A stretch of DNA of 64,000 bases, from positions 124,001 through 188,000 of the forward strand of contig NW_027251778.1 of NCBI RefSeq assembly GCF_044704955.1, written 5' to 3'. How positions within the stretch are numbered: position 1 is the first letter of the stretch; every line of letters begins with the position of its first letter. The position numbers and the translations under genes are program-made. The notes under the pieces are model-generated. The model was not told the DNA's origin and did not search any database. It worked only from the letters and a program-made list of their open reading frames with translations. The DNA is from Pristiophorus japonicus (lineage: Eukaryota). Shown in pieces: positions 8,661-56,984 of this stretch.

Positions 8661-9470
8661 ATGTATCAGTTACTGGGTCTGATGGTCTTGATTCAGCGTA
8701 AGGGCGATTATTTCAAGCAATCATTCTTTTTAATTATCTTCACTCTTTCTTTTTTCTATCTTTCATTCTTTCTTTCCCTATTTCCCTCGTTCACTCTTTT
8801 TTGCATCTTTCTTTCTCTCTTTCTTTCTCTCCATCTTTGTTTTCTTCCATATTTCTCGCACTCTCTTTTCTTTCTTTCCATCTTTCTCTCTTCTNNNNNN
8901 NNNNNNNNNNNNNNNNNNNNNNNNNNNNNNNNNNNNNNNNNNNNNNNNNNNNNNNNNNNNNNNNNNNNNNNNNNNNNNNNNNNNNNNNNNNNNNNNNNNN
9001 NNNNNNNNNNNNNNNNNNNNNNNNNNNNNNNNNNNNNNNNNNNNNNNNNNNNNNNNNNNNNNNNNNNNNNNNNNNNNNNNNNNNNNNNNNNNNNNNNNNN
9101 NNNNNNNNNNNNNNNNNNNNTCCCCCAGAATGACCCTGTTTACTGACCGCCTCCTCTCCCCGTCTCTCTCCCAGACGTGAGCTCACAGACTATCCGCCAG
9201 ACTCCGGCCGCAGTCTCCAGATTTCCCGGGGAGGGAGTGGACCTGAAGTGTGATGTGGTGGGCACCAGTGATGATAGCATGTACTGGTACCGACAGGACC
9301 CGGGGAGGGAGCCGCAGTTTATGTTTTACTCTGTGGGTACCAATGCCGTGGATCCAGACGGGCCGGTTGATGGTTTTACCGCCCAGCGACCGAATGGCAA
9401 GGAGTTTAACCTGAAGTCCTCCGGCCTGCGGGCGGATCAGGCGGCCGTGTATTACTGCGCCTGGAGTCTG
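8661..9470 (+). CDS. TRBV: TCR beta V segment V1, family A (TRBV30-like), apparently functional; leader exon 8661-8697, V exon 9175-9470
   Basis: Leader MYQLLGLMVLIQ+c|GTAAGG, acceptor cccAG. The V exon has conserved Cys, WYRQ and YYCAWS, and SQTIxQ, FYSVG and CAWS resemble mammalian TRBV30. A 23-RSS follows. The intron contains an N gap. Confidence 0.9.
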
Positions 9471-9509
9471 CACAGTGACTCAGGGAGATGGAGGGGCTCG
9501 ACACAAACC
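9471..9509 (+). other. 23-RSS of V1
   Basis: CACAGTG + 23 nt (actcagggagatggaggggctcg) + ACACAAACC. Confidence 0.95.
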
Positions 9510-10124
9510 CCACCATGGCAGGAAACACCTGTGGATGGTGAGCCCTGTCGCGTTTATTCTGCAGCGCGAATGTGTTTTTGACAAGCAAAGACGGTTTAGA
9601 GTGAAAGTGAGAGATTAGGTGTAGAGTCACTGGAGAAGGTACAAAGAAAGATTAACAGGGATAACACCAGAATTGAGAGGTTCAAACTATCAGGAAATGC
9701 TCAACAGGCCGGGGCTGTTGTGTCCAGAAAAGAGAAGGCTGAGGGGTGAACCTGTCAGAGGTCTTTACAGATTAACTGTGTGTTTTATAGGGTAGGGCGG
9801 AGAGAAGCAAGATAGAAAGATAGGAAGATAGAAAGATAGGAAGATCAACAGAAAGGAAGATAGAAAGAATAAAAGAAAGAAAGGAAGAAAGAAAGACAGA
9901 GTCAAGAATGAAAGATTGTAAGCAGGAAAAAGAGCTGAAAGAAATATAGAGAAAAGAAAGATAAAAAGGCAGAACGATAGTAAAAAAAATAACGAATTTT
10001 TAGAAGGTGGAATGCAAGAAAGATACATTTTTAAACACTGACAGTGTATTTTCTTTCTTCACACGGATAGCAGAGGGCGTACTAGACCATGAAACAAACG
10101 AGTGCCCAGAACATAGTTCACAAT

Positions 10125-11185
10125 AGGAACAAAGGAACAGGAGGAGGCCCATTCAGCCCCTCGACTCTGCTACACAGGAACAGGAAGAGGCCCATTCAGC
10201 CCCGCGAGCCTGTTACACAGGAACAGGAGGAGGCCCATTCAGCCCCTCGACTCTGCTACACAGGAACAGGAAGATGCCCATTCAGCCCCGCGAGCCTGTT
10301 ACACAGGAACAGGAGGAGGCCCATTCAGCCACTCAATTCTGTTACACAGGAACAGGAGGAGGCCCATTCAGCCCCTCGAGCCTGTTACACAGGAACAGGA
10401 GGAGGCCCATTCAGCCCCTCGAGCCTGTTACACAGGAACAGGAGGAGACACATTCAGCCCCTCGACTCTGTTACACAGGAACAAGAGGAGACCCATTCAG
10501 CCCCGCGAGCCTAATACACAGGCACAGGAGGAGACCCATTCAGCCCCTCGAGTTTGTCACACAGGAACAGGAGGCCATTCAGCCCCTCGGGCCTGTTATA
10601 CAGGAACAGGAGGAGGCCCATTCAGCCCCGCAACTCTGTTACACAGGAACAGGAGGAGGCCAATTCAGCCCATCGAACCTGTTACCCAGGAACAGGAGGA
10701 GGTCATTTAGTCCCTCAAGCCTGTTACACTGGAAGAGGAGGCCCATTCAGCCCCACTAATCTGTCACACAGGAACAGGAGGAGGGTATTCTGCCCCTCGA
10801 AACTGTTTTACAGGAATAGGAGGAGGCCCATTCAGCCCCTCGACTCTTTTACACAGGAACAGCTGGAGGCCTTTCAACCACTCGAGCCTGTTACAGAGGA
10901 ATAGGAGATCAATTCAGCCCATCGAGCATGTTACAGAGCAACGAGAGGAGGCCATTCAACCAGTGTAATCGCTTAAAAGGAGCAGGTGGCCCATTCATAA
11001 CCCTCTCGTCGGTTACACGGGAACAGGAGGAGGTCCATTCAGCCCCTCGAGCCTGTTAAACAGGAACAGGAGGAGTCCCATTCTGCCCCTCGAGACTGTT
11101 GCACAGGAACAGGAGGAGTCCCATTCAGCCCCTCGAGACTGTTGCACAGGAACAGGAGGAGGCCCATTCAGCCTCTCGAACCTGC
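10125..11185. repeat. 43/40-bp minisatellite array (cagcccctcgagcctgttacacaggaacaggaggaggcccatt)
   Basis: Tandem units running into a degraded minus-strand CR1 (to ~11730). Confidence 0.92.
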
Positions 11186-12010
11186 TGGCCCGTTCAATTA
11201 CATCATGTCGATCATTATATTTCTCTTTTGAACCATATGACGCGAAACCCAGACCCAACCAAAACTGTAGCAATCTCTGTCTTGAAGCCTGCAATTGACC
11301 CCCGGCCTCAACATTTGGAGGAGAGAGGTTCATAATTCCATTACTCTTTGTGTGAAGAAGTGGTTTCTGATGCAATGCCTCAACGGCCTGCCTCTAATTT
11401 TAAGTCTCTGTCCATTCCTTCTGGAGTCCCCGACGGAGGAAATTGATTCTCCCTATCTACCACATCCACCCCTTTTAATGCTTTATGAACCTCAATCAGT
11501 TCACCGCCGAATCTCCTATTGTGAATGTAGTACAAACCATGTTGATGTAACCTCTCCTCTTCATTTAATCCCCCTGGCCTGCCTGTCATTCTGTTGAATC
11601 TGTGTTGAAGCCCATTGCAAGTCAAACAGGGAGGTAAGGTGCCCAGAACAGAAGTCAGCTCTCCAGATGAATTCTGACTGAGGCTGTGTGCAATTGAAGC
11701 ATCAAATCTTTCTCTCTGTATTGCAGCCTCCTTCACCCGTAACTATCCACTCATTGGTAGTGATTTGTGGACATGGTCTTCGAAGTCACTTTGTTCCTCC
11801 ACAGTTAACTCCCACTTCCCATCTGCTCCACTCAAAGGCCAATCAGAGAGGGAGGGGCGGGGCTGACAATCAGACGATCCAAACCTGCATCACTTCCGCA
11901 CATTCTTCATATTTTCCTCAATGATTTGAAAAGAGCGAATTTGGCTCCTCACAGACTCCCCGCTCCTGCTCTCGCTCCTTTCATTATTGAGGGAAAACTT
12001 CAAGTCAAAG

Positions 12011-12562
12011 ATGTATCAGTTACTGGGACTGATGATCTTGTTTCAGCGTAAGGGACTTTTACACAATATNNNNNNNNNNNNNNNNNNNNNNNNNNNNNNN
12101 NNNNNNNNNNNNNNNNNNNNNNNNNNNNNNNNNNNNNNNNNNNNNNNNNNNNNNNNNNNNNNNNNNNNNNNNNNNNNNNNNNNNNNNNNNNNNNNNNNNN
12201 NNNNNNNNNNNNNNNNNNNNNNNNNCCCTGTTTACTGACCGCCTCCTCTCCCTGTCTTTTTCCCAGACGTGAGCTCACAGACTATCCACCAGACTCCAGC
12301 CGCTGTCTCCAGATTTCCCGGGGAAGGAGTGGAATTGAAATGCACTATGGAGGGAACAAGCAACCCTTACATGTACTGGTACAGACAGGACCCGGGGAGG
12401 GAGCCGCAGTTTATGTTTTACTCTGTGGGTACCAATGCCGTGGATCCAGACGGGCCGGTGGATTTTTTTACCGCACACCGACCGAATGAGAAGGAGTTTA
12501 ACCTGAAGTCCTCCGGCCTGCGGGCGGATCAGGCGGCCGTGTATTACTGCGCCTGGAGTCTG
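12011..12562 (+). CDS. TRBV: TCR beta V segment V2, family A (TRBV30-like), apparently functional; leader 12011-12047, V exon 12267-12562
   Basis: Leader MYQLLGLMILFQ|GTAAGG. Open V exon SQTIHQTP...CTMEGTSNPYMYWYRQ...FYSVG...YYCAWS. Confidence 0.9.
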
Positions 12563-12601
12563 CACAGTGACTCAGGGAGATGGAGGGACTCGACACAAAC
12601 C
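12563..12601 (+). other. 23-RSS of V2
   Basis: CACAGTG-23-ACACAAACC. Confidence 0.95.
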
Positions 12602-14508: not shown

Positions 14509-15043
14509 ATGTATCAGTTAATGGTCTTGTTTCAGCGTAAGGGAAGTTTACAAAATATAAGTCTTNNNNNNNNNNNNNNNNNNNNNNNNNNNNNNNNNNN
14601 NNNNNNNNNNNNNNNNNNNNNNNNNNNNNNNNNNNNNNNNNNNNNNNNNNNNNNNNNNNNNNNNNNNNNNNNNNNNNNNNNNNNNNNNNNNNNNNNNNCA
14701 GAATGTCCCTCTTTACTAATCGCCTCCTCTCCCCGTCTCTTTCCCAGACGTGAGCTCACAGACCATCCGCCAGACTGTGGCCGCTGTCTCCAGATTTCCC
14801 GGGGAGTGAGTGGAATTGAAATGCACTATGGAGGGAGCAAGCACCCCTTACATGTACTGGTACAGACAGGACCCGGGGAAGGGGCCGCAGTTTATGTTTA
14901 TCTCCCAAATTGTACAAAGTGTGAATGCAGTGGGGCCGGTGGATGGCTTTACCGCCCAGTGACCGACTGGCAAGGAGTTTAACCTGAAGTCCTCCGGCCT
15001 CTGGGTGGATTATGCGGCCATGTATTACTGCGCCTGGAGTCCG
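14509..15043 (+). pseudogene. TRBV: TCR beta V pseudogene V3, family A; leader 14509-14536, V exon 14748-15043
   Basis: The leader lacks 9 nt relative to V1/V2. In-frame TGA stops at 14807-14809 and 14960-14962; otherwise colinear with V2. Confidence 0.9.
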
Positions 15044-15082
15044 CACAGTGACTCAGGGAGATGGAGGGGACCGACAGAAACC
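15044..15082 (+). other. 23-RSS of V3
   Basis: CACAGTG-23-ACAGAAACC. Confidence 0.9.
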
Positions 15083-15416: not shown

Positions 15417-15507
<91 letters not shown>

Positions 15508-17221: not shown

Positions 17222-18053
17222 ATGCCTGTGTCCCAGCTCTGGCTTGTGTTGCTGGTGTTAACGGGTCAGGTGGAGCTGGGCTGTGAGATCTCAGCGATCC
17301 TCACTTTAATTTCCCCGTGTGTCCCTTCACACCGCGGGCTGGTCCAGATTCTCTGCCCCTCGGTTTATAGCGTGTTCTCTCTCTCTCTCTTTCTCTCTTT
17401 CTCTCTCTCTGTCTCTCTCTGGCTCTCTCACTTTCTCGTTTCTATTGCTCTCTCCTCATGTGCTCCTTCTCATCCTCCGGCGGTGTGTAGATTGTCGCTC
17501 GGTTTATCTCTCTCTCTTTATCTCATTCTCTCTCTGTCTTTGCCTCTCTTTATCTCTGTCCGCCCCGCTGTCTCAGTCCCTCCCTCACTCTCCCTCTCGC
17601 TCTCTCCGTCGCGTTTTGTCTCTCTGCCTCCCTCGCCCCCTCTCTCCCTCACTCTCTTTACCCTCCTTTACCGCTTCATGGCGGGTGTTTATATGAAATT
17701 TCTCCCTGGGTTTATCGCTATCTCTAACTCTCTCTCTCTTTCTCGGTTTTACAGATGTGGGGGCCGTGCTGATCCAACAGACCCGCGCTTCCATATCCAA
17801 TTCCCTGGACACTCCGGTTAGCATCGAGTGCCTTTACACAGAAGCAACAGCTAGCTCCTATTTCTACTGGTACCGGTGGCATCCTGACCGGGAGCCTCAG
17901 AACCTTTTCATTTCCAGAAACGCCAAAATGGTCACTCCCTCCGGTGAGGTGGACGGATTCACCGCCAGGAGACCCGACAACACCCACTTCTACCTGGAGA
18001 CCTCCGGCCTGCGGGCGGATCAGGCGGCCGTGTATTACTGCACCTGGAGTCTG
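17222..18053 (+). CDS. TRBV: TCR beta V segment V4, family B; leader 17222-17264, V exon 17755-18053
   Basis: Leader MPVSQLWLVLLVLT+g with donor GTCAGG (weaker than the GTAAGG of most paralogs). Open V exon DVGAVLIQQT...SIEC...YFYWYRWHPDREP...YYCTWS. Confidence 0.8.
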
Positions 18054-18092
18054 CACAGTGACTCAGGGAGATGGAGGGGCTAGACACAAACC
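18054..18092 (+). other. 23-RSS of V4
   Basis: CACAGTG-23-ACACAAACC. Confidence 0.95.
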
Positions 18093-21767: not shown

Positions 21768-23298
21768 ATGCAAATAGCGTTCCTTGTATCTACTCTTCCA
21801 CTTTTCCTGTTGGGTAAGTAGCCTGAAATCACATCGGATTATTTTTTTAGAGCGATGTGTTGCATTCGAGAGTAGACTTCACTAAACTAGCAAGGTTCGA
21901 AGTGTGGCTGAGTGGTTCGAAATTCGTCTGTGGCTTTTCGCATTGACAGAGTTAAAGATGAGGCTAAGACCCAGGGAATATAGATAGTCTAAGTGAGTGG
22001 GCAAGAACCTGGCGAATGGAATATCATGTGGTGAAATGTGAAGTTATCCACTTTGGCAGGAAAAATAGAAAAGCCGAGTATTTTTTAAACAATGAGAGAC
22101 TGGGAAATGTTGGTGTTCAGAGGGACCTGGGTGTCCGTGAACACCATTCACTGAAAGGTAACATGCAGCTACAACAAGCGTTTAAGAAAGCAAATGGTAT
22201 GTTGGCCTTTATTACAAGAGGATTTGAGTATATGAGTGAAGTCGGCTTACTGCAATTATATCAGGCTCTGGTGAGACCGCACCTGGAATATTGTGTGCAG
22301 TTTTGCTCTCCTTACCTAAGCAAGGATATGCGTACCATAGAGGGAGTGCAACAAAGGTTCACCAGACTGATTCCTGGGATGGGGGGATTGTCCTATGAGG
22401 TGAGATTGAGCAGACTAGGCCGATATTCTCTGGAGATCAGAAAAATGAGAGGTGATCTCCTTGAAACCTACAAAATTATTACAGGTATTGGCAGGGTAGA
22501 TACAGTTAGGATGTTTCCCCAGGCTGGGGTGTCTAGAACCAGAGGTCGAACAGTCTCAGAATAAGGGGTCGGCCATTTAGGACTGAGATGGTGAGGAAGT
22601 TCTTCACTCAATGGCTGGTGAATCTTTGGGATTCTGTAACCGAGCCAGCTGTGGAGGCTCTGTCTTTGAGTATATTCGAGACAGAGATAGATTTTTGGAT
22701 AGTAAGCGAATCGAGGGATCGGGCGGGAAATTAGAGTTGAGGTAGATGATCAGCCATGATCTCATTGGATGTCGGTGCAACTCGAGGGGCCGAATGGCCG
22801 ACTCCTGCTCCTGATTCTTATGTTCTTATCCTATTTAATGTTGGGTGTGGGGAAAGGACTGGGAAAAGGGCATGGGGAGGGGAGTGGGTCTAACTGGACA
22901 GCCCAACCAACGACCTGGTACAGGCACGATGGGCCGAAGGGCCTCATTCCCTGCAATTGGATTTGATGAATTCACTTCATTTGTTTTGTTTGTAGATTTA
23001 ACACACGGGTTGCGGCCGCTGCAAAGCCCCCTCACACTGGTGGTTGCAGAAAACAAGCTTGCAACAATAAGTTGCTATGAAGATGCCTCAACTCCTCAAT
23101 CGATGCTCTGGTACAGTCAACCCGCCGGCCAGGGTCTGGTGTTAATCGGCTACATTCAGGTCGGAGGAACGATTCATTACGAGGATAAGGATCAAACCCG
23201 CTTTGAAATTACAGGAAACGGCGAAAGAAACTCTGCTCTGAAGCTTCCCAGAGCCGCCCCTGCCGACACGGCCGTGTATTACTGTGCTACGTGTACTG
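21768..23298 (+). CDS. TRBV: TCR beta V segment V5, family C (single copy); leader 21768-21813, V exon 22996-23298
   Basis: Leader MQIAFLVSTLPLFLL+g|GTAAGT, acceptor ttgtAG. V exon DLTHGLRPLQSP...ISC...MLWYSQPAGQGLVLIGY...DTAVYYCATCT. The intron carries a CR1 fragment. Confidence 0.85.
21960..22830 (+). mobile_element. CR1 LINE 3' fragment inside the V5 intron
   Basis: KCEVIHFGRKN..QRDLGV..LVRPHLEYCVQF..MRGDL plus tail. Confidence 0.9.
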
Positions 23299-23337
23299 CA
23301 CAGTGTTACAGACACTGTGAACGTCCGATCAAAAACC
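23299..23337 (+). other. 23-RSS of V5
   Basis: CACAGTG-23-TCAAAAACC. Confidence 0.9.
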
Positions 23338-23414
23338 TCCCGCCAGGCTCAGGGTGAAAAAGTAAAGAAATAACTTGCATTTGTGTCGCGCCTTCTATGA
23401 CCTCTCAAGACGCC

Positions 23415-24209: not shown

Positions 24210-25271
24210 ATGTATCTGTTACTGGGTCTCATGATCTTATTTAAATGTAAGTGATTATTTCACGCAGTAATCGTTTTAAATATCCGTTCCTTACTGTTTC
24301 TTTCCTTCTTTCGTTCATTCTATCTTTCTCTCTTCCTTTCTTTTTCTCATTCTTTACTTCTTTACTACTTTCTTTATCTCTTTATCTCATTATTCACTTC
24401 TTTCTTTCGCCCCTTCTCTCATTCTTTACTTCTTTCTTGCTATCGTTCTTTCTTTAATTCTCTCTTTCTCTCCCTCTCTCTTTGTCTCATTCGTTGTTTC
24501 TCCATATCTTTCTTTCTAACTTTCTTNNNNNNNNNNNNNNNNNNNNNNNNNNNNNNNNNNNNNNNNNNNNNNNNNNNNNNNNNNNNNNNNNNNNNNNNNN
24601 NNNNNNNNNNNNNNNNNNNNNNNNNNNNNNNNNNNNNNNNNNNNNNNNNNNNNNNNNNNNNNNNNNNNNNNNNNNNNNNNNNNNNNNNNNNNNNNNNNNN
24701 NNNNNNNNNNNNNNNNNNNNNNNNNNNNNNNNNNNNNNNNNNNNNNNNNNNNNNNNNNNNNNNNNNNNNNNNNNNNNNNNNNNNNNNNNNNNNNNNNNNN
24801 NNNNNNNNNNNNNNNNNNNNNNNNNNNNNNNNNNNNNNNNNNNNNNNNNNNNNNNNNNNNNNNNNNNNNNNNNNNNNNNNNNNNNNNNNNNNNNNNNNNN
24901 NNNNNNNNNNNNNNNNNNNNNNNNNNNNGAATGTCCCTGTTTATTGATCACCTCCTCCCCCCGTCTCTTTCCCAGACGTGAGCTCACAGACGATCCGCCA
25001 GACTCCGGCCGCTGTCTCCAGATTTTCCGGGGAGGGAGTGGAATTAAAATGCACTGTGGAGGGAGCAAGCACCCCCGACATGTACTGGTACAGACAGGAC
25101 CCGGGGAAGGGGCCGCAGTCCATGTTTTACTCCAGCGGCACCAATCACATCAATCCAGAGGGGATGGTGGATGGTTTTACCGCCGAGCGCCGGAATGACA
25201 AGGAGTTTAACCTGAAGTCCTCCGTCCTGCGGGCGGATCAGTCGGCCGTGTATTACTGCGCCTGGAGTCTG
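24210..25271 (+). CDS. TRBV: TCR beta V segment V6, family A, apparently functional; leader 24210-24246, V exon 24976-25271
   Basis: Leader MYLLLGLMILFK+t|GTAAGT. Open V exon ending YYCAWS. Confidence 0.88.
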
Positions 25272-25310
25272 CACAGTGACTCAGGGAGATGGAGGGGCCC
25301 GACATAAACC
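25272..25310 (+). other. 23-RSS of V6
   Basis: CACAGTG-23-ACATAAACC. Confidence 0.9.
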
Positions 25311-27127: not shown

Positions 27128-28178
27128 ATGAACCCCCGGATCTCCATCCCCGCAGAGACGCCGGTGTCCCAGCTCTGGCTTGTGTTGCTGGTGTTAACTG
27201 GTAAGGTGGAGCTGGGCTGTGAGATCTCAGCAATCGTCACTTTAATTTCCCCGTGTGTCCCTTCACACCGCGGGCTGGTCTCGATTCTCTCCCCCTCGGT
27301 TGAGAGTGTGCTCTCTGTCTGTCTACCTCCCCCTCTCTCCCACCCTCACTGCCTCTCTCTCTCTCTGTCTGTCTGTCTCCCTCTCTCTGTCTTCCACACA
27401 GTCTGCCGCTCTCTCTCTCTCCCTGCCACTCTTTGTCTGTTTGTCTTACAGCCTGACTGTCCATTTATATTACCTTTGTCTCTCATTCTCTATCTGTCTC
27501 TCTCTCCCTCTCTTTCTCTTTCTCTCTCTCTCTCTTTCTCTCTCTCTGTCTGTCTCTCTGCCTCTCTCAGTTTCTCGTTTCGAGCATTCTCCTCATCTGC
27601 TCCTTCTCATTCTCCGGTGACGTGTTGATTGTCGTCGGTTTATTTCTCTCTCTGTATCTCATTCTCCCTCTCTCTTTGCCGCTCTCGCTCGGTCCCGGTA
27701 GCTCTTCCCCCCATCACTCTCTCTCACTCTCTCTGTCTCGCTCTGTCTCTCTGCCTCTCTCGCCCCCTCTCTCCTTCACTCTCTCTCCCGTCGTCCGCCC
27801 ATTCATGGCGGGTGTTTATATGCAATTTCTCCCTGGGTGTACCTCCATCTCTAACTCTCTCTCTTTCTCGGTTTTACAGATGTGGGGGCCGTGCTAATCC
27901 AACAGACTCCTGCTTCCATTTCCAAATCCCCGGTCACTGCGGTTAGCATCGAGTGCCTTTACACAGAAGCAACACTCGGCTCCTATTTCTACTGGTACCG
28001 GTGGCATCCTGACCAAGAGCCTCAGAACCTTTTGTATTCCAACGTTCCTGGAACGGTCATTCCGTCCGGTGAGGTGGGTGGATTCACCGCCAGGAGACCC
28101 GACAATACCCACTTCTACCTGGAGACCTCCGGCCTGCGGGCGGATCAGGCGGCCGTGTATTACTGCGCCTGGAGTCTG
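27128..28178 (+). CDS. TRBV: TCR beta V segment V7, family B, apparently functional; leader 27128-27200, V exon 27880-28178
   Basis: Leader MNPRISIPAETPVSQLWLVLLVLT+g|GTAAGG. Open V exon with both Cys and the Trp, ending YYCAWS. Confidence 0.88.
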
Positions 28179-28217
28179 CACAGTGACTCAGGGAGATGGA
28201 GGGGCCCGACACAAACC
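28179..28217 (+). other. 23-RSS of V7
   Basis: CACAGTG-23-ACACAAACC. Confidence 0.95.
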
Positions 28218-29934
28218 CCACCATGGCAACAAACACCTGTTGGAGATTGATCTACCTGTACGTTTGTTTGTGTGCCTCTTTACCCAGTTTTCTCTCTGAC
28301 TCTGTATTTATCAGTGTGTCTATCTGTCTGACCATCTATCCATCTATCTCTCTGTCTGTCCGTCTATCCGTCTGTCTATCTACCCACCTATATCAAAGGG
28401 GGTAGGAACCAATGGTGAGAGATAGATCTGTCTTGTTGTCTATGTGTTTGTTTGTATGTCTATTTACCAATTTACCTGCCTGTCTGTCTGTCTCTCTATC
28501 TGTCTGTCTGTCTGTCTGTCTATCTGTCTATCTACCTCTCCATGTATCTGTCTGTCTGTCTGACTGTCTGTACACTATATCTGCAATTGAACATGCAGTT
28601 GGAGGGGACGAGCATGTAACATAATGGTCAGCAGGGGGGCAGCAAAGATCACATTTGATCCTCTCCAGGCGGAGAGATCGAATGAAAGAATAAACCGTGC
28701 CTCGAAGTAAAGAGAGTTTCATTGGATGAAAGAAAGATAAAAGTTGAAAGAGTGGAATGAAAAATGAAAGAAAGCGAACAGGGGTGTCAGGGAGCGGATT
28801 AAATGTTTTTAAAATATCAAGAAAGAAGGCAAGAAGTTAAAAAAGATGAAGAGGAAATGAAAGTGGGAGAAATAAAGGAAAATGGCGAATTAATGTATGC
28901 GAGAAATAAAGGCAGAAATAACATCAACGGGCAGGAGAGAGAAATGGTTCGATGAAAGGAAAAATGATTCAGAGAAAGAGTTTCAGAAAAAAGTAATGAA
29001 AAAAGTAAAGATAGAACGAAACACAGAGCGGAGGGAAAAATGGACAGAAAGAAATACATTAGGAAAGAGGGAAGGTTAGAAATGAAAAGAGAATGTAAGA
29101 AGGAGAGAGAAAGGGAGAGGTTAGAGAGAAAGAAGGAAAGCAGGAAGAAAAGAGAGAAAGAAAGCAAATGAGAAAGAAGGATAGAAAGAGAAAATGAATG
29201 AATGAAAGAAAGAAGCATAGAAAGCTTGAATTAAAGAAATAAAGGTTAGATTGATGGAGTTACAAACAAGAAAGGAAAGCTAGCAGGATAGAAAGAAGGA
29301 AAGAAAGAAGGAAGGAATGATAAAAAGAGAGAAATAAAAAGAAAGAAAGAGAGCCCGAAAAAAAGAAGGAAATAAAGAAAGAAGGAAAAAAGGAAGTAAG
29401 AAAAGAGAGAAAGTGTAAATGAAAGAAACGGAGAATGAAAGAGAGAAAGTGAGAAAGAGAGAACGAAGGGAAGAAGGAGCAGATTAAATAAATAAGGAAA
29501 GCGAATGATAGAAAGAAGGAAAGAAGGAGAGAAGGTTAGAAAGAACGGAATAGCAAAGGAAGACCTCTCTTTTAATGATTACATTCAGAGTGAATCCCAC
29601 GCCTGATTTGTTATGTGGGGATAAATCTCTCTCTTACTGGTTAGATACAGAGTTAAAGCCTCTCATTCCCTGATTAAACCCGGAGAGTGAGTCAGACAGA
29701 AAGTATAATTCCCTTTTCTCACCATCACTGACCTCTCAGATGAAGGGTCCGTGGACTGCCCTTTACCCGGAGTCCCCATTAGCCCCGCTCCGGGAATGAC
29801 CAATCCTGATGAGGGAGCCAATGAACTGGTGAAGAGAGGTTGGCCCCTCCCACACGCACACTGAACATTGGAGAGCAGGGGGTCAGTAAATGCCACATTG
29901 CCCAGAACTGTGAGATATTCAGAGGTTGCACACC

Positions 29935-31467: not shown

Positions 31468-31514
31468 TAGACCATGAAACACACCAGTGCCCAGTAACAT
31501 GGTTCACAATAGGT

Positions 31515-34105: not shown

Positions 34106-34144
34106 CACTGTGGTTCAGAGTCATTCGGCGCCTTGACAAAAACC
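34106..34144 (+). other. 23-RSS of V9
   Basis: CACTGTG-23-ACAAAAACC (consensus nonamer, variant heptamer). Confidence 0.88.
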
Positions 34145-35500: not shown

Positions 35501-35936
35501 ATGAAAATACATTTAACGCGGTGCGTTTTGTTTGCCCTGCTGTTGCACAGTAAGTCTCCCTCTGCAATTGCTTGGGCGCGGTGTGTCTCCCAATATCACC
35601 GGCCCTGTGTTATAACCCACTTACTCTGCTCATATTCAGAGGTGTATCTAGCGGCAAATTTCAGCAAATTCTGCTGTAATCTCCACTTCCCTGCACTCCC
35701 CACTGCTCGTCCTCTGTTCTGCGGAGGGTTCCTTCAGCTTAGGATTTTTTCTGGTCCCGCCAGCTCCCAGACAGAGAGCTCTCACTGCTTTTCTTCTCTT
35801 GCAACGCCGACAGACTCGAGCCGGCGGTAGAGGTGAATGGATTCACCGCCTCCAGAGCTGACCAGTCCACCTTCCATCTGCAGGCAGCCATTTACATGCG
35901 GAGCACTCGGGGGTGTATTATTGCAGCTGGAGTCTT
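35501..35936 (+). pseudogene. TRBV: TCR beta V pseudogene V10, family E (CxWS type); leader 35501-35549, V exon about 35640-35936
   Basis: Leader MKIHLTRCVLFALLLH+a|GTAAGT, intron about 90 nt. Reconstructed across about three frameshifts: FQQ..AVISTSLHSPLLVLC..FWSRQLPDRELSLLF..VNGFTASRADQSTFHLQ..GVYYCSWS. Confidence 0.85.
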
Positions 35937-35975
35937 CACAGTGACACTGGGGGCCGGGGCGGTGCAACACAAACC
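35937..35975 (+). other. 23-RSS of V10
   Basis: CACAGTG-23-ACACAAACC. Confidence 0.92.
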
Positions 35976-37860: not shown

Positions 37861-38165
37861 CCATTTATTCTCTCACTTGTTAGATACAGAAATAGACAGG
37901 CAGAGAGTTTAACTCGCCTTTTCTCTCTCCCTTCCGTTATTAACGGCTTATGGAAACCTAGACAATGTCAGAAAGGGAGGAAACGGATCACCGATTATCC
38001 GGAGTCCCCATTAGCCCCGCCCCTGGAATGACCAGTCGCGATGTGGGAGCCAATGAACTGGTGAAGAGAGATTGGCCCTCCCACCCGCACATTGAACATT
38101 GGAGAGCAGGGGGTCAGTAAATGCCACAGTGCCCAGAACTGTGAGATGCTCAGAGGTTGCACACC

Positions 38166-38568
38166 ATGAACCCCCGGATCTCCCTCCCCCCAGAGATGCC
38201 TGTGTCCCAGCTCTGGCTTGTGTTGCTGGTGTTAACGGGTAAGGTGGAGCTGGGCTGTGAGATCTCAGCGATCCTCACTTTAATTTCCCCGTGTGTCCCT
38301 TCACACCGCGGGCTGGTCCAGAATCTCTCCCCCACGGTTTATAGGGTTCCTCTGTCAGTCAGTCTATCTGTCTCTCTCTCTGTCCTATTGCCTGACTGTC
38401 CATATATCGTTCCCTTTTCTCTCACTTTCTCTTTGTATCTCTCTCTTACTCTCTCTCCCTCTCAATGTCTCTCTCTAGCTCTGTCTGTCTGTCTGTCTCT
38501 CTCTCTCTTTATCTCTCACTCTCTCTATCTATCTCTCCCGTTCTCTCTCTCTCTCACTCTCTCTCTCC

Positions 38569-38619: not shown

Positions 38620-39241
38620 ACTTTTCCGTCTCTGTCCCTCTCTCCTCATGTGCTCCTTCTCATCCTCCGGTGATGTGTAGATTGTCGCTCGGTTTATCTC
38701 TCTCTCTCACTGCATCTCATTCGCTAACTGTCTTTGCCTCTCTCTCCCTGTCAGTCCCGCTGTCTCACTCCCTCCCTCACTCTCTCTCTCTCTCTCTCGC
38801 TCTCTCCGTCTCGCTCTGGCTCTGTACCTCTCTCGCGCCCCCTCTCCCTCACACACTCTCCCCTCCTCTGGTGGGTGTCTATAAGCAATTTCTCCGTAGG
38901 TTTATCTCTATCTCTAACTCTCTCTCTTTCTCGGTTTTACAGATGTGGGGGCCGTGCTGATCCAACAGACCCCCGCTGCCATATCCAATTCCCCAGGCAC
39001 TCCGGTTAGCATCGAGTGCCTTTACACAGAAGCAGCAGCTGGCTCCTATTTCTTCTGGTACCGGTGGCATCCTGACCGGGAGCCTCAGAATCTTTTCTCT
39101 TCCAACTACGCTGAAATGGTCACTCCCTCCGGTGAGGTGGATGGATTCACCGCCAGGAGACCCGACAAAACCCACTTCTACCTGGAGACCTCCGGCCTGC
39201 GGGCGGATCAGGCGGCCGTGTATTACTGCGCCTGGAGTCTG
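38166..39241 (+). CDS. TRBV: TCR beta V segment V11, family B, apparently functional; leader 38166-38238, V exon 38943-39241
   Basis: Leader MNPRISLPPEMPVSQLWLVLLVLT|GTAAGG. Open V exon ending YYCAWS. Confidence 0.9.
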
Positions 39242-39280
39242 CACAGTGACTCAGGGAGATGGAGGGGCTCGACACAAACC
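39242..39280 (+). other. 23-RSS of V11
   Basis: CACAGTG-23-ACACAAACC. Confidence 0.95.
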
Positions 39281-41484: not shown

Positions 41485-42087
41485 ATGTATCAGTTACTGC
41501 GTCTGATGCTCTTGTTTCCGCGTAAGGGACTTTTACACAATGTAAGTNNNNNNNNNNNNNNNNNNNNNNNNNNNNNNNNNNNNNNNNNNNNNNNNNNNNN
41601 NNNNNNNNNNNNNNNNNNNNNNNNNNNNNNNNNNNNNNNNNNNNNNNNNNNNNNNNNNNNNNNNNNNNNNNNNNNNNNNNNNNNNNNNNNNNNNNNNNNN
41701 NNNNNNNNNNNNNNNNNNNNNNNNNNNNNNNNNNNNNNNNNNNNNNNNNNNNCTATTTATTGACCGTCTCCTCTCCCCGTCTCTTTCCCAGACGTGAGCT
41801 CACAGACCATCTGCCAGACTCCGGCTGCAGTCTCCAGATTTCCCGGGGAGGGAGTGGAATTGAAATGCACTGTGGAGGGAGCAAGCAACCCTTACATGTA
41901 CTGGTACAGACAGGACCCGGGGAAGGGGACGCAGTTTATGTTTATCTCCCCACCTGTACAATGTGTGAATCCAGAGGTGCCGGTGGACAGGTTTACCGCC
42001 AAGCGACCGAATGACAAGGAGTTTAACCTGGAGACCTCCGGCCTGCGGGCGGATCAGTCGGCCGTGTATTACTGCACCTGGTGTCTG
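41485..42087 (+). CDS. TRBV: TCR beta V segment V12, family A, open frame with three extra Cys; leader 41485-41521, V exon 41792-42087
   Basis: Leader MYQLLRLMLLFP|GTAAGG. V exon SQTICQ...VQCVNP...YYCTWCL. The RSS is variant. Confidence 0.75.
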
Positions 42088-42126
42088 CACAATGATTCAG
42101 GGAGATGGAGGGGCTCGACACAAAAC
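42088..42126 (+). other. Variant 23-RSS of V12
   Basis: CACAATG-23-ACACAAAAC. Confidence 0.8.
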
Positions 42127-46881: not shown

Positions 46882-47819
46882 ATGAACCCCCGGATCTCCC
46901 TCCCCCCAGAGATCACTGTGTCCCAGCTCTGGCTTGTGTTGCTGGTGTTAACGGGTAAGGTGGATCTGGGCTGTGAGATCTCAGCGATCCTCACTTTAAT
47001 TTCCCCGTCTGTCCCTTCACAGCGCGAGCAGGTCTAGATTCTCTCCCCCTCGGTTTATAGAGTGTCCTCTGTCTATGTGTCTGCCTCTCTCCCTCTGTCT
47101 CCCTCCCTCTGTGCCGCTATCTCTCTACCTGCTACTCGATCTGTTTGTCTTACTGCGTTACTGTCCAGCTATGTTTCCCTTCTCTCTCTCTCTCTCTCTT
47201 TCTCTTACTATCTTGTTTCTATCCCTCACTCCTCGTGCACCTTCTCATCCTCCAATGATGTGTAGATTGTTGATTGGTTGAACTATCTTTCTGTATCACA
47301 TTCTCTCTGTCTTTGCCTCGCTCGTTCTGTCCGTCGCGCTGTCTCACTCCCTCCCTAATTCTATCTCTCACTCTCTCAGTCGCGCTTTGTCTCTCTGTCT
47401 CTCTCGCCCAGTCTCTGCCTCACTCTCTCTACCCTCCCCTGCCCCATCATGGCGGATGTTTATATGCAATATCTCCCTGGTTTTATCGCTATCTCTAACT
47501 CTCTCTCTTTCTCGGTTTTACAGATGTGGGGGCTGTGCTGATCCAACAGTCTCCCGCTTCCATTTCCAATTCCCCGCGCACCCCGGTTAGCATCGAGTGC
47601 CTTTACACAGAAGCAGGTGCTGTCTCCCGTTTCTACTGGTACCGGTGGCATCCTGACCGGGAACCTCAGAACCTTTTCTCTTCCTACTCTGGAACGGACA
47701 CTCCCAGCGGGGAGATGGACGGGTTCACCGCCAGGAGACTCGACAACACTCACTTCTACCTGGAGACCTCCAGCCTGCGGGCGGATCAGGCGGATGTGTA
47801 TTACTGCGCCTGGAGTCTG
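46882..47819 (+). CDS. TRBV: TCR beta V segment V13, family B; leader 46882-46954, V exon 47524-47819
   Basis: Leader MNPRISLPPEITVSQLWLVLLVLT|GTAAGG. Open V exon ending YYCAWS, with CDR2 one codon shorter than its paralogs. Confidence 0.87.
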
Positions 47820-47858
47820 CACAGTGACTCAGGGAGATGGAGGGGCTCGACACAAACC
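47820..47858 (+). other. 23-RSS of V13
   Basis: CACAGTG-23-ACACAAACC. Confidence 0.95.
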
Positions 47859-51869: not shown

Positions 51870-52599
51870 ATGCGATTCCATTTCCTCCTCACTGCTGGGT
51901 TCTTTCTGACGCTGAGTATGTTAAGATCCACCTTTCGATCACAGTGCTATAATTGCTCAACCGAGAGGGTTATTCAGTGATCAAAATAATGTCCTGTGGT
52001 GGTGAAATACTGCGGTCTAATGGATAAGCAATCAATTAATTAACGTCAGACAACTCAATAATCTGCTATATTTTTAACCTGAAATGCTATGAATATAACT
52101 TCCATTGTTTATAATTGATTGAACTTTGCAAAGTCCTCTGTTTTATTTTACAGTTGCATTGTTTCTGCTGCTTGTTGGGAATTCGGGAAAGGCTAAATAT
52201 CTATCGATAAATCGGCCCAACGCCAACATGTATCACTGAGAGTTTCACTTTAACGATGCTAATTCTGTTGCCCCGAATTTCTGTTTCCAGGTGGTTCCCG
52301 CGGCGAGTTGCTGTATCAGTGGCCCCGCTCGCTCAGCGTACGCCAGCGAGAATCCGCCGAGCTGAACTGTTTTCAGAACGGGACGGCTCGCAGTAACATG
52401 CTGTGGTATCGTCATTACGCCGGCGGAGGATTGGCGTTAATCGGGTCTATTTACCGAAGCAGCGATGCTCAGTATGAAAAGGGTTTTGAGAGCGGGTTCA
52501 CCATCACCAGGACCGTGGAAAATAAGAAATCCACACTGAAGATCGAGACAGTCGAAACCAGTGACCTGGCGCTGTATTTCTGTGCCACTGCTGATGGGA
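51870..52599 (+). CDS. TRBV: TCR beta V segment V14, family D; leader 51870-51915, V exon 52291-52599
   Basis: Leader MRFHFLLTAGFFLTL+a|GTATGT. V exon paralogous to V9, ending YFCATADG. Confidence 0.87.
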
Positions 52600-52638
52600 C
52601 ACAGCGGCTCAGAGTCAGTCGGCAGCTTGACAAAAACC
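52600..52638 (+). other. 23-RSS of V14
   Basis: CACAGCG-23-ACAAAAACC. Confidence 0.9.
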
Positions 52639-53305: not shown

Positions 53306-53339
53306 GCCTTCGCTAGAGCACAATTTGACCACCAGGGCT

Positions 53340-55295: not shown

Positions 55296-55648
55296 ATGAA
55301 CCCCCGGATCTCCCTCCCCCCAGAGATACCTGTGTCCCAGCTTTGGCTTGTGTTGCTGGTGTTAACGGGTAAGGTGGAGCTGGGCTGTGAGATCTCAGCC
55401 ATCCTCACTTTAATTTCCCCGTGTGTCCCTTCACACCGCGGGCTGGTCTAGATTCTCTCCCCCTGGGTTTATAGTGTGTTCTCTGTCTGTCTGCCTCCCT
55501 CCCGCTCTCTGTCTCTCTGTCTCCATCTATTTCTCTTCCACTCTCCCTGCCACTCTCCCGCGCTCCATATCTGTCTGTCTGCCTTATTTCCTGCCTGTCC
55601 ATTTATATTTCCCTTGTCTCTCAATCTCTCTCTTTTTGTGCAACTATC

Positions 55649-55714
<66 letters not shown>

Positions 55715-56330
55715 ACTTTCTAATTTCTATCTCTCACTCCTCATGTGCTCCTTCTCATCCTCCAGTGATGTATAGATTGTCGGTCTGTTTATCTCTCACT
55801 CGATCTCATTCTCTCTCTGTCTTTCCCGCTTTCTCTCTGTCTGTCCCGCTGTCTCACTCCCTCCCTCACTCTCTCTCTCGCTCTCTGCGTCGCGCTCTGT
55901 CTCTCTGCCTCTCTCGCCCCCTCTCGCTCACTCTCTCTTCCCTCCTCCGACCCTTCAAGGCGGGTGTTCATATGCAATTTCTCCCTGGGTTTATCTCGAT
56001 CTCTAACTCTCTCTCTTTCTCGGTTTTACAGATGTGGGGGCCGTGCTGATCCAACAGACCCCCGCTTCCATATCCAATTCCCCGGGCACTCCGGTTAGCA
56101 TCGAGTGCGTTTACACAGAAGCAACAGCTAGCTCCTATTTCTACTGGTACCGGTGGCATCCTGACCGGGAACCTCAGAACCTTTTCTATTCCATCGTCCC
56201 TGGATCGGTCACTCCCTCTGGTGAGGTGGACGGATTCACCGCCAAGAGACCCGACAACACCCACTTCTACCTGGAGACTTCCAGCCTGCGGGCGGATCAG
56301 GCGGCCGTGTATTACTGTGCCTGGAGTCTG
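55296..56330 (+). CDS. TRBV: TCR beta V segment V15, family B, apparently functional; leader 55296-55368, V exon 56032-56330
   Basis: Leader MNPRISLPPEIPVSQLWLVLLVLT|GTAAGG. Open V exon ending YYCAWS. Confidence 0.9.
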
Positions 56331-56369
56331 CACAGTGACTCAGGGAGATGGAGGGGCTCGACACAAACC
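56331..56369 (+). other. 23-RSS of V15
   Basis: CACAGTG-23-ACACAAACC. Confidence 0.95.
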
Positions 56370-56984
56370 CCACATGGCAGCAAACACCTGTGGATGGTGA
56401 GCCCTGTCGCGTTTATTCTGCAGAGCGAACATGATATTGACAAGCAGAGACGGGTTAGAGTTAAAGTGAGAGATTAGGAGTAGAGGCACTGGAGAAGGTG
56501 CAAAGGAAGATTAACTGGGATAACTCCAGAATTGAGAGGTTCAAACTATCAGGAAAAGCTGAACAGGCCGGGGCTGTTGTGTCGTGAAAAGGGAAGGCTG
56601 AGGGGTGAACATGTCAGAGGTCTTTACAGATTAACAATGTGTTTTATAAGGTAGGGCGTAGAGAAGTGAGATAGAAAGATTGGAAGATGGAAAGAAAGGA
56701 AGATCGGAAGAATAAAAGAAAGAAAGGAAGAGAGAAAAGAAGACAGAAGGAAAGATAGAAAGAATGTAAGCAGGAAAAACAGTTGGGAAGAAAGATAGGG
56801 AAATTAAACAAAGATAGAAAGGCAGAATGATCGTAGAAATAACAACGAATTTTTAGAAAGTTACGAATGCAAACAAAATACTTTCTTAAACACTGAAAAT
56901 GTGTTTTCTTTATCCACACGGACAGTAGAGGGCGCTCTAGACCATGAAACACACATGTGCCGAGAAAACGGTTCACAATCGGTA

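What the first reader, a model, noticed from the sequence alone, without database searches (positions are those of the whole stretch)
9410..56400. Two divergent V families share an almost identical FR3-end/RSS/3' block
Seen: families A and B differ in promoter, leader, intron and most of the V exon. From cctccggcctgcgggcggatcaggcggccgtgtattactgcgcctggagtctg onward, through the heptamer, the whole 23-nt spacer (actcagggagatggaggggctcg), the nonamer and ccaccatggcaggaaacacctgt, 11 copies are near-identical, including synonymous and spacer positions. V12 (family A) carries the family B variant LETSG instead of LKSSG, so its switch point lies a few codons further 5'. Inference: recurrent gene conversion or unequal crossover is focused on the V end/RSS, standardising the RSS across families. 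Germline RAG activity is established in cartilaginous fish (germline-joined Ig genes), so RSS-initiated germline exchange is a testable but unproven cause.
Basis: partly seen in the sequence, partly recalled or inferred. Interest (0 to 1): 0.8.

Follow-up and report, generated by a model that had tools for sequence, protein, structure and literature searches.

The report
Shared RSS module joins V cassettes
In a shark T-cell-receptor-like V gene array, two otherwise unrelated V gene families end in the same ~120-base stretch (end of the V exon plus its recombination signal), which sits at every junction between two kinds of repeat unit; this shows germline recombination between the families, but a role for the RAG enzyme is not shown.

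Summary
Eleven V segments of two families (A, B) share a module from 29 nt before the YYC codons to about 26 nt past the nonamer. A-B identity jumps from about 50% to about 95% at that point. Synonymous difference falls from 0.69-0.95 to 0.045. Only 8 copies are near-identical. A3, A4 and A5 differ from the consensus at 8-11%.

New here: homology does not stop behind the RSS. The 3' flanks come in two types, X and Y, and both occur behind both families. X always runs directly into an A gene (4 of 4) and Y into a B gene (4 of 4). The array is therefore built from two cassette types that meet only in the module.

X flanks behind A and B genes differ about as much (8-30% per 25-nt window) as X flanks behind different B genes, so exchange between the families is certain.

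Continuing short-tract gene conversion is favoured by four results:
- The deficit of changes is uniform over all site classes.
- The pseudogene B3 keeps a near-consensus module.
- A same-age family D pair shows no such conservation.
- Synonymous changes in the module number 2 against 8.3 expected.

Purifying selection also contributes, because two other organisms hold the module at about 89%. The gap-rich assembly could have smoothed copy differences. RAG initiation is untested. This is a new variant of known V-gene concerted evolution.

The parts
9175..9509 (+). A1: family A V exon and 23-RSS; shared module 9418-9535; X-type 3' flank
   Evidence: (V-set, E 2e-11). The module has 0/118 private differences.
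12267..12601 (+). A2: family A V exon and 23-RSS; module 12510-12627; X flank
   Evidence: Module 1/118.
14748..15082 (+). A3: family A pseudogene with two in-frame stops; module 14991-15108 diverged; Y flank
   Evidence: Module 13/118.
17755..18092 (+). B1: family B V exon and 23-RSS; module 18001-18118; X flank
   Evidence: Module 3/118.
24976..25310 (+). A4: family A V exon and 23-RSS; module 25219-25337 diverged; Y flank. The leader is not visible because of the N run 24527-24928.
   Evidence: Module 10/117.
27880..28217 (+). B2: family B V exon and 23-RSS; module 28126-28243; Y flank. It shares the spacer variant C at +51 and T at +86 with its upstream neighbour A4.
30559..30896 (+). B3: family B pseudogene (Cys23 changed to Arg, heptamer TACAGTG) with a near-consensus module 30805-30922; X flank
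   Evidence: (2/118 in the module against 0.095 outside, p 7e-4).
38943..39280 (+). B4: family B V exon and 23-RSS; module 39189-39306; X flank. Reference copy for the laid reads.
41792..42126 (+). A5: family A 5' part with B-type GAG ACC (LETSG); heptamer CACAATG; module 42035-42152 diverged; Y flank
   Evidence: Module 10/118.
47524..47858 (+). B5: family B V exon (3-nt deletion in CDR2) and 23-RSS; module 47767-47884; Y flank
56032..56369 (+). B6: family B V exon and 23-RSS; module 56278-56394; X flank
61505..61783 (+). A6: family A V exon cut after GTGTATTA by an inserted repeat; X-flank remnant at 63120-63365. Lies outside the finding.
9534..11184 (+). Example of an X flank: about 593 nt of unique sequence, then a 43-bp satellite that runs into the A2 upstream region. 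Also found behind A2, B1, B3, B4 and B6.
28242..29854 (+). Example of a Y flank: rich in microsatellites and running into the B3 promoter. Also found behind A3, A4, A5 and B5.
38006..38324 (+). B4 promoter, leader exon and first ~105 nt of the intron: a second island of low divergence among B copies (pairwise difference 0.03-0.11)
35643..35975 (+). Family C V pseudogene. It has YYCSWSL, heptamer CACAGTG, its own 23-nt spacer (13/23 identical to the A/B spacer by my own count) and nonamer ACACAAACC.
33811..34143 (+). D1: V of a further family with its own 23-RSS. Used as a control.
52305..52637 (+). D2: paralogue of D1 of the same age as the A/B expansion (pS 0.19). Its V end and RSS are not homogenised.
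23022..23345 (+). E: V of another family with its own 23-RSS

Best explanation
The window is part of a same-strand array of at least 16 V gene segments with 23-RSSs, TCR-beta-like, in a cartilaginous fish. The array is built from two kinds of roughly 2.5-3 kb repeat unit:
- U_A = X flank, 43-bp satellite, A promoter, A leader, intron, A 5' exon.
- U_B = Y flank, B promoter, B leader, intron, B 5' exon.

The two unit types share no homology except a module of about 118 nt. The module holds the last 10 FR3 codons, YYCAWSL, the heptamer, the 23-nt spacer, the nonamer and about 26 further nt. It sits at every unit junction.

Shown: the 3' half of the genes (module plus flank) has a far more recent common ancestor than the 5' halves, so A and B have recombined in the germline.

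Inferred, in three steps:
1. A conversion patch or crossover first gave both families the same module.
2. The module then served as the homology for unequal crossovers that duplicated and shuffled U_A and U_B in a burst. This gave all four combinations (AX, AY, BX, BY) and star-like trees.
3. Since then, short-tract non-crossover gene conversion together with purifying selection on the FR3 end and RSS has kept the module about 4-5 times less diverged than its surroundings in 8 copies. Three copies (A3, A4, A5) dropped out and drift at the neutral rate.

What starts the exchange is unknown. Ordinary homology-dependent meiotic or mitotic recombination is enough to explain it.
For: Switch in identity and synonymous divergence:
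- A-B identity is 0.34-0.65 before about -40 and 0.93-0.97 in the module.
- pS is 0.69-0.95 before the module and 0.045 inside it.
- Fisher p is 1e-26 to 6e-30.

Shared flank:
- A1 and A2 align with B1, B3, B4 and B6 from -38 to +980..+1687 at 80-84%, like A1-A2 at 87%.
- In most 25-nt windows of the X flank, A-B difference is no greater than B-B difference.
- The X-flank tree is star-like and A is not separated from B. End branches are 0.07-0.12 and inner branches about 0.

Unit structure:
- X copies lie behind A1, A2, B1, B3, B4 and B6. Y copies lie behind A3, A4, A5, B2 and B5.
- Direct neighbours: X runs into A in 4 of 4 cases and Y into B in 4 of 4. My own count gives 1 in 70 by chance.
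- AX vs BY pairs share only -38..+87, at 95-96%.

Homogenisation:
- The ratio of private differences inside vs outside the module is 0-0.5 in 8 copies (p 5e-5 to 0.09). It is 0.7-0.9 in A3, A4 and A5.
- By my own tally, changes in the 8 copies are spread evenly: nonsynonymous 6, synonymous 2, heptamer 1, spacer 3, nonamer 0, post-nonamer 6.
- Synonymous changes in the module number 2 against about 8.3 expected from the 5' exon rate. Poisson p is about 0.01 (my own calculation).
- The pseudogene B3 still has a near-consensus module.

Control: D1 and D2 are the same age (pS 0.19-0.21). They differ at 2/7 heptamer and 4/23 spacer positions, their FR3-end pS is 0.15, and they cannot be aligned behind the nonamer.

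Unassembled data: seven contigs of the source organism join an A-type FR3 to the module at 39180. Summed contig depth rises about tenfold over the module.
Against: - Selection is not excluded. Two other organisms hold only the module region (39172-39283) at about 89%, while the B-type 5' exon and X flank do not map at 85% or more. This suggests the module also evolves slowly between species.
- Within family B, framework regions are already 90-97% identical. A second conserved island covers the B promoter, leader and intron start. Low divergence is therefore not unique to the module.
- The AU test cannot reject an A clade in the module (p 0.35), because there are too few informative sites.
- The counts per site class are small.
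- The window looks like a short-read scaffold: 11 N runs, all in low complexity. Links across the 118-nt module could be wrong, which would remove the AX and BY combinations. Graph simplification could also have erased copy-specific variants in the more similar copies, which would mimic the 8-versus-3 split.
- The public contigs break at the module, so no read-level bridge was seen.
Confidence: 0.6

Rival explanations
1. One old chimera followed by purifying selection only. A single ancient crossover or conversion gave A and B the same V end, RSS and flank. The units were then duplicated. The module has stayed alike because the FR3 end, heptamer, spacer, nonamer and a protein-binding site just behind the nonamer (it contains CACCTG) are all functionally constrained. 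A3, A4 and A5 diverged because they are dead or unused.
For: - The module is the only part that two other organisms hold at 85% or more.
- A3 is a pseudogene with a diverged module.
- The promoter/leader island shows that functional non-coding DNA in these units can stay at 93-97% identity.
- Differences inside the module become denser away from YYC and the heptamer (my own tally).
- The spacers of families C and D still match the A/B spacer at 12-13 of 23 positions (my own count).
Against: - The deficit of changes is the same at nonsynonymous, synonymous, spacer and post-nonamer sites.
- The pseudogene B3 keeps the module.
- The intact, same-age D1/D2 pair shows neutral-level divergence in FR3 end, heptamer and spacer.
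- Both BY copies and the AX copies need more than one exchange inside the module.
- No CTCF-type motif lies in the post-nonamer part at 2 mismatches or fewer.
Confidence: 0.25
2. Assembly artefact. The module is truly shared by both families. The near-identity of 8 copies and the mixed AX and BY linkages were produced by graph collapse, polishing or mis-scaffolding in a short-read assembly.
For: There are 11 N runs in 64 kb, all in low complexity. Every A-family intron is broken at the same place. The public contigs of the same sample break at the module borders.
Against: - Each of the 8 copies keeps 0-5 private variants.
- Variants near the right edge (+51 C, +86 T) go together with the Y-flank subtype in A4 and B2.
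- The distance from the A/B-diagnostic bases at -33/-30 to the X/Y split just past +86 is about 120 nt. That is within one 150-nt read (my inference).
- The X-to-A and Y-to-B adjacency lies inside contigs and does not depend on links across the module.
Confidence: 0.1
3. RAG-initiated germline conversion. RAG expressed in germ cells nicks the 23-RSS at the heptamer border, and the nick is repaired from a paralogous V. This gives short tracts centred on the cut site.
For: - The shared tract (-29..+88) spans 53 nt to the left and 65 nt to the right of the cut site between +23 and +24.
- Differences are rarest near the heptamer (my own tally).
- RAG activity in shark germ cells is documented for Ig genes (PMC2193156).
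- RAG nickases and a nick-only RSS supported homologous recombination of a chromosomal reporter in CHO cells (Lee et al. 2004, as reviewed in PMC6101574).
Against: - There is no footprint of RAG action: all RSSs are intact, and there is no joined segment and no signal joint.
- A3 and A4 have intact heptamers and nonamers but are not homogenised.
- Both borders are single historical events shared by the copies, so the symmetry rests on one case.
- Homology limits and selection explain the same pattern.
Confidence: 0.05

Closest known systems
Germline gene conversion and concerted evolution among V gene segments, for example the mouse T15 VH family (PMC2187977) and documented TRBV conversion within an overall birth-and-death pattern (PMC2685407)
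   Same: Paralogous V segments exchange short stretches. The tree of the exchanged tract conflicts with the tree of its flanks.
   Different: Here the exchange crosses two families whose promoters, leaders, visible intron ends and 5' exons are unrelated at the DNA level. It is confined to the last 53 coding nt plus the RSS plus about 26 nt behind it. The known cases concern members of one family and mostly the coding region.
Expansion of TRB V arrays by tandem duplication of blocks through unequal crossover (bovine and human TRB; PMC2685407)
   Same: Homology units holding genes of more than one subgroup are duplicated in tandem. Both families expanded together.
   Different: [quoted passage not shown] Here all eight direct unit junctions fall inside the V-end/RSS module itself, so each V gene is a hybrid of two units.
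Germline-joined Ig genes of sharks, attributed to RAG activity in germ cells (PMC2193156)
   Same: Same group of animals. Both involve an antigen-receptor gene and its RSS changing in the germline.
   Different: Those genes have lost their RSSs through V(D)J-type joining. Here all RSSs are intact and the products are those of homologous recombination. No RAG footprint was found.
RSS-linked CTCF elements behind V segments
   Same: A conserved stretch lies directly behind the nonamer.
   Different: The post-nonamer 26 nt has no CTCF-type match at 2 mismatches or fewer. The only CTCF-like motif lies about 615 nt downstream in the X flank.

Membership tests
Rearranging antigen-receptor V gene segment | V-set immunoglobulin domain with Cys23, Trp41 and the YxC motif | tested here: met
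   Pfam V-set E 2e-11 for A1 and 2e-9 for B4. The translations show C, WYR and YYC. Only V exons were searched; leader and V exon were never joined.
Rearranging antigen-receptor V gene segment | Heptamer, 23-nt spacer and nonamer directly behind the V exon | tested here: met
   10 exact CACAGTG-N23-ACANAAACC sites, none with a 12-nt spacer, against 0 expected.
Rearranging antigen-receptor V gene segment | Split leader with a short intron | tested here: inconclusive
   Family B has a clear leader, GT donor and AG acceptor. In family A the leader and donor are seen in A2, A3, A5 and A6, but the intron is mostly N.
TCR beta V (TRBV) | Closest similarity to TCR beta V domains | tested here: inconclusive
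   The best single-V-domain chains in the PDB search are TCR beta chains at 68 bits (5xov_J, 3hg1_E), but antibody light-chain V domains score alike. The nearest database protein is an unnamed turtle Ig-like domain at 44% identity.
TCR beta V (TRBV) | Linkage to TRB D, J and C segments | not testable with these tools
   The window holds no D, J or C segment and no 12-RSS.
Concerted evolution by gene conversion | A tract whose tree conflicts with both flanks, bounded on both sides by unrelated sequence | tested here: met
   A1 or A2 vs B2 or B5 share only -38..+87 at 95-96%. The 5' tree splits A from B with 100/100 support, while the block tree interleaves them.
Concerted evolution by gene conversion | Divergence lowered equally at constrained and unconstrained sites, and also in pseudogenes | tested here: met
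   The deficit is even over site classes. The B3 pseudogene has 2/118 in the module against 0.095 outside. The D1/D2 control shows no lowering. Counts are small.
Concerted evolution by gene conversion | Paralogues within a species are more alike than orthologues between species | tested here: inconclusive
   At 39206 all contigs of the source organism have G and all contigs of organisms C and D have A. Independent expansion in each species would give the same result, and orthology cannot be assigned.
Unequal crossover (NAHR) hybrid genes | A hybrid gene with one switch point whose 3' side continues into the other parent's flank | tested here: met
   A1 and A2 continue from -38 into more than 1 kb of the flank also found behind B1, B3, B4 and B6.
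Unequal crossover (NAHR) hybrid genes | Repeat units whose junctions fall in the shared homology | tested here: met
   X runs directly into A in 4 of 4 cases and Y into B in 4 of 4, with all junctions in the module. This depends on assembly links across the module.
Unequal crossover (NAHR) hybrid genes | Copy-number variation of the units between individuals | not testable with these tools
   Only contigs of one sample of the source organism were laid.
RAG-mediated germline rearrangement | Coding or signal joints, loss of the RSS, or P/N nucleotides | tested here: not met
   All module copies keep the heptamer, 23-nt spacer and nonamer in place. There is no joined segment.
RAG-mediated germline rearrangement | RAG expression or RSS nicks in germ cells of this species | not testable with these tools
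   No RNA run was among the holders.
RSS-linked CTCF element | CTCF core motif within about 25 nt behind the nonamer | tested here: not met
   No match to CCASYAGRKGGCRSY at 2 mismatches or fewer in any module. Matches lie at about +570 to +627 of the X flanks. Window-wide there are 11 matches against 7 expected.

The most novel reading that the evidence does not exclude
RAG expressed in shark germ cells nicks V-segment RSSs, and repair of the nick from paralogous V segments spreads one V-end/RSS module through unrelated V families. The recombinase would then shape the germline array as well as the somatic repertoire, and the module would act as the crossover point for array expansion.
Probability: 0.06. 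Interest if true: 0.9.

Novelty: new variant of a known kind. Interest (0 to 1): 0.5.

Why it matters
V gene arrays are usually described as evolving by birth and death, with duplication borders in anonymous DNA. Here the border of every directly adjoining repeat unit is the V-end/RSS module itself, and two unrelated V families use one and the same recombination signal.

If this holds up with long reads and in other species, it gives a concrete mechanism by which an array can expand quickly while keeping equal-quality recombination signals on different V families. It would also give a tractable place to ask whether conversion, selection or the recombinase itself keeps RSSs uniform.

Tried and rejected
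- Protein word search with the A1 V exon gave only 3 distant hits (turtle and two teleosts). No shark V proteins were found, so there was no cross-species protein route.
- The PDB sequence search could not separate TCR beta from light-chain V.
- The protein atlas does not hold the V exon. A search with the turtle homologue returned only generic 'Ig-like domain' clusters.
- The AU test on the 118-nt module has too few informative sites (p 0.35).
- A GENECONV-type run test was not run. It conditions on polymorphic sites, of which the module has almost none, so it would only restate the A-B contrast.
- GC content and CpG observed/expected of the module (0.62; 0.56) are not outliers against the 5' exon (0.56; 0.61). 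There is no clear sign of GC-biased conversion.
- The Vbeta-promoter-type decamer (AGTGAYRTCA, TGACGTCA) is absent upstream of the V genes.
- CTCF motif in the post-nonamer part: none.
- Y is not an insertion into X. X sequence does not resume behind Y flanks.
- The public contigs break at the module, so they cannot confirm which 5' part goes with which flank.
- Two literature searches found no description of a V-end/RSS module shared across families, and no shark TRB locus paper in the held library.

Full report
**What is there**

The motif GTGTATTACTGCGCCTGGAGT occurs 12 times and the 23-nt spacer 11 times, all on the + strand. Shuffled sequence gives none. I use the G of GTG-TAT-TAC-TGC as position 0 of each copy.

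Translation backwards from position 0 gives three groups:
- Family A: A1 9447, A2 12539, A3 15020, A4 25248, A5 42064.
- Family B: B1 18030, B2 28155, B3 30834, B4 39218, B5 47796, B6 56307.
- A third, frameshifted family C at 35913.

Further features of the array:
- A sixth A copy at about 61.5 kb is cut after GTGTATTA by an inserted repeat.
- tblastn found three more V exons of other families, each with its own 23-RSS: E at 23022-23288, D1 at 33811-34092 and D2 at 52305-52586.
- A1 and B4 V exons match Pfam V-set.
- Ten sites fit CACAGTG-N23-ACANAAACC exactly, and none has a 12-nt spacer.

I searched V exons only. Leader and V exon were never joined into a spliced model.

The best single-domain PDB matches are TCR beta chains, but light-chain V domains score alike. 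'TCR-beta-like' is therefore probable, not proven. Another agent's note calls this genome a shark; I did not test that.

**Gaps**

None of the 11 N runs touches a V exon, the shared module or the first 180 nt or more of 3' flank. Within the finding, five gaps lie in leader introns and one lies in the flank behind A3. All gaps are bordered by CT- or ATCT-type low complexity.

Every A-family intron is broken at the same relative place, so the A intron is largely unread. I did not fill or look up any N. The gap pattern looks like a short-read scaffold, which matters for the caveats below.

**Check of the observation**

In a MAFFT alignment of the 11 copies, A-B identity in 30-nt windows is 0.34-0.65 up to about -40. 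It rises to 0.93-0.97 between -23 and +65.

| Measure | 5' exon | Module |
|---|---|---|
| A1 vs B4 differences | 141/244 | 2/118 (Fisher p 6e-30) |
| A-B synonymous difference | 0.69-0.95 | 0.045 |
| Tree | A and B split, 100/100, branch about 1.06 changes per site | A and B interleaved |

The AU test cannot reject an A clade in the module (p 0.35), because few sites vary.

The last family-diagnostic bases are AAG TCC (A) against GAG ACC (B) at -33 and -30. A5 has the B form, so its switch point lies between -39 and -33. It rests on two bases.

Correction: only A1, A2 and B1-B6 are near-identical, with 0-5 differences from the consensus in 118 nt. A3, A4 and A5 have 10-13.

**The homology does not stop behind the RSS**

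Just past +86 the copies split into two flank types:
- X: about 593 nt of unique sequence followed by a 43-bp satellite. Found behind A1, A2, B1, B3, B4 and B6, with a remnant behind A6.
- Y: rich in microsatellites. Found behind A3, A4, A5, B2 and B5.

Both types occur behind both families. A1 aligns with B1, B4 and B3 from -38 to +980, +1316 and +1687 at 80-84%, much like A1-A2 at 87%. In most 25-nt windows of the X flank, A-B difference is no larger than B-B difference. The X-flank tree is a star, with end branches of 0.07-0.12 and inner branches of about 0, and A is not separated from B. The tree of the B-family intron plus 5' exon is also a star.

The 3' half of A and B genes is therefore about as young as the expansion within each family, while the 5' halves are saturated. 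That requires recombination between the families, whatever one thinks about selection.

**Unit structure**

The flank type predicts the next gene.
- X runs directly into an A gene in all four direct cases: A1 to A2, A2 to A3, B4 to A5, B6 to A6.
- Y runs directly into a B gene in all four: A3 to B1, A4 to B2, B2 to B3, A5 to B5.
- By my own count this is 1 in 70 by chance.
- The three longer intervals hold the extra V segments E, D1 plus C, and D2.

The X unique part, the satellite and the A upstream region fill the whole interval, and the same holds for Y and the B upstream region.

The array is thus made of two cassette types. U_A is X up to the A 5' exon, and U_B is Y up to the B 5' exon. 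They share only the module, which lies at every junction.

Pairs such as A1 vs B2 or B5 share only -38..+87 at 95-96%, with unrelated DNA on both sides. That looks like a conversion patch. B2 shares the spacer variant at +51 and the base at +86 with its neighbour A4. B5 has a different Y subtype. Taken together with AX genes existing beside BX genes, this implies more than one exchange inside the module.

**Is the near-identity conversion or selection?**

Neutral divergence can be read in three places that agree:
- the X flank, with end branches of 0.07-0.12;
- the B intron, with pairwise difference of 0.13-0.2;
- within-family synonymous sites of FR1 and FR3a, at 0.17-0.19.

In the module, synonymous difference is 0.03-0.06.

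Private differences per copy are 0-0.5 times the rate outside the module in the 8 similar copies (p 5e-5 to 0.09). In A3, A4 and A5 they are 0.7-0.9 times.

In the 8 copies the changes are spread evenly over site classes. My own tally gives 6 nonsynonymous, 2 synonymous, 1 heptamer, 3 spacer, 0 nonamer and 6 post-nonamer. Synonymous changes number 2 against about 8.3 expected from the 5' exon rate (Poisson p about 0.01; my own calculation).

B3 is a pseudogene. It has lost Cys23, carries many framework changes and has the heptamer TACAGTG. Yet its module has only 2/118 differences, against a rate of 0.095 outside.

Internal control: D1 and D2 have intact reading frames and are the same age (pS 0.19-0.21). 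Their FR3-end pS is 0.15. They differ at 2 of 7 heptamer and 4 of 23 spacer positions, and the DNA behind the nonamer cannot be aligned. A V end and RSS in this locus are therefore not generally held at 97%.

Together these results favour a younger coalescence of the module, that is, gene conversion.

**Evidence on the other side**

- Public contigs of two other organisms hold only 39172-39283 (about -46..+65) at about 89%, plus a high-copy repeat piece. They do not hold the B-type 5' exon or the X flank at 85% or more.
- One contig of organism C joins an A-like FR3 to the module. By my own count the FR3 matches at about 76% over 25 nt, while the module matches at 89%.

The module therefore also evolves slowly between species. 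Neutral concerted evolution would not predict that, so purifying selection contributes.

- Position 39206 is G in all contigs of the source organism and A in all contigs of organisms C and D. Either concerted evolution or separate expansions could explain this.
- Position 39212 is T in 63% of the source organism's depth (29 contigs) and in all contigs of C and D. T is therefore probably ancestral. In the window only A4 and A5 keep it.
- Among B copies, the promoter, leader and first ~105 nt of the intron form a second island of low divergence, with pairwise difference of 0.03-0.11. The module is not the only such place.
- GC content and CpG ratio of the module are not outliers.

**Assembly caveat**

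Seven contigs built from the raw data of the source organism join an A-type FR3 to the module at 39180, and summed contig depth rises about tenfold over the module. The sharing of the module by both families is therefore not a scaffolding artefact.

However, the contigs break at the module, so the pairing of 5' parts with flanks (AX, BY) rests on the assembly. Graph simplification could also have erased variants in the more similar copies.

**RAG**

All RSSs are intact and there are no joints. The shared tract reaches 53 nt to the left and 65 nt to the right of the cut site, and differences are rarest near the heptamer. But both borders are single shared events, and selection on YYC and the heptamer gives the same gradient. 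A3 and A4 have intact RSSs and are not homogenised.

Germline RAG activity in sharks is documented (PMC2193156). So is homologous recombination started by RAG nicks (Lee et al. 2004, reviewed in PMC6101574). The idea is therefore possible, but nothing here supports it specifically.

**Comparison with what is known**

Germline conversion among V segments and block duplication in TRB loci are both documented (PMC2187977; PMC2685407). What is unusual here:
- The exchanged tract crosses two families that are otherwise unrelated at the DNA level.
- It is limited to the V end, the RSS and about 26 nt behind it.
- It coincides with every direct unit junction.

I found no paper describing this in the held library. 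Other notes of this scan report CTCF-like motifs 24-25 nt behind V RSSs elsewhere in this genome. I tested that here and found none in the module. A CTCF-like motif lies about 615 nt downstream in the X flanks.

**Verdict**

My confidence in each part of the explanation:

| Claim | Confidence |
|---|---|
| Exchange between the families | certain |
| Recurrent crossover within the module | about 0.7, subject to long-read confirmation |
| Continuing conversion rather than selection alone | about 0.55-0.6 |
| RAG initiation | about 0.05 |

This is a new variant of a known kind, of moderate interest.

Noticed in passing
window 23022-23345, 33811-34143, 52305-52637: Three more + strand V exons of two further families (E; D1 and D2) with intact reading frames and their own 23-RSSs. 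None of them carries the A/B module.
   Followed up: partly
window 61505-61783 and 63120-63365: The sixth family A copy is cut after GTGTATTA by an inserted repeat. A remnant of the X flank and its satellite follows about 1.3 kb later.
   Followed up: partly
window 8895-9120, 12070-12225, 14566-14698, 24527-24928, 41548-41752, 61075-61474: Every family A leader intron carries an N run that ends 311-326 nt before the YYC codons. All 11 N runs of the window sit in low-complexity sequence, which suggests a short-read scaffold.
   Followed up: partly
window 38006-38324 and the same region of B1, B2, B3, B5, B6: The B-family promoter, leader exon and first ~105 nt of the intron are 93-97% identical among copies, while the rest of the intron is 63-87%. 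The leader has two in-frame ATGs: B1 lacks the first, and B2, B5 and B6 lack the second.
   Followed up: partly
window 13155, 18600, 31452, 39845, 56922, 63308 (+ strand): A CTCF-like motif, ACAGTAGAGGGCGCT or a close variant, lies about 570-627 nt behind X-type V genes, just before the 43-bp satellite.
   Followed up: no
window 10129-11184, 13217-13974, 18662-18951, 31514-32508, 39907-40535, 44216-45778, 58390-60017, 63370-63972: Arrays of a 43-bp satellite (ACACAGGAACAGGAGGAGGCCCATTCAGCCCCTCGAGCCTGTT) of very different lengths. It resembles part of the repeat inserted into A6.
   Followed up: no
window 38902-38943 and 39399-39489: Summed contig depth spikes here in the source organism and in organism D, which points to high-copy interspersed repeat pieces inside the B4 intron and the X flank.
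   Followed up: no
window 30559-30896: B3 has lost the canonical Cys23 (changed to Arg) and has the heptamer TACAGTG, so it is probably a dead gene despite an open reading frame.
   Followed up: yes
window 35096-35420, 36070-37851, 43281-44142: Minisatellites lie around family C and behind A5: a 35-bp unit upstream of C, a 22-bp unit repeated 81 times behind C, and a GC-rich 24/48-bp unit behind A5.
   Followed up: no
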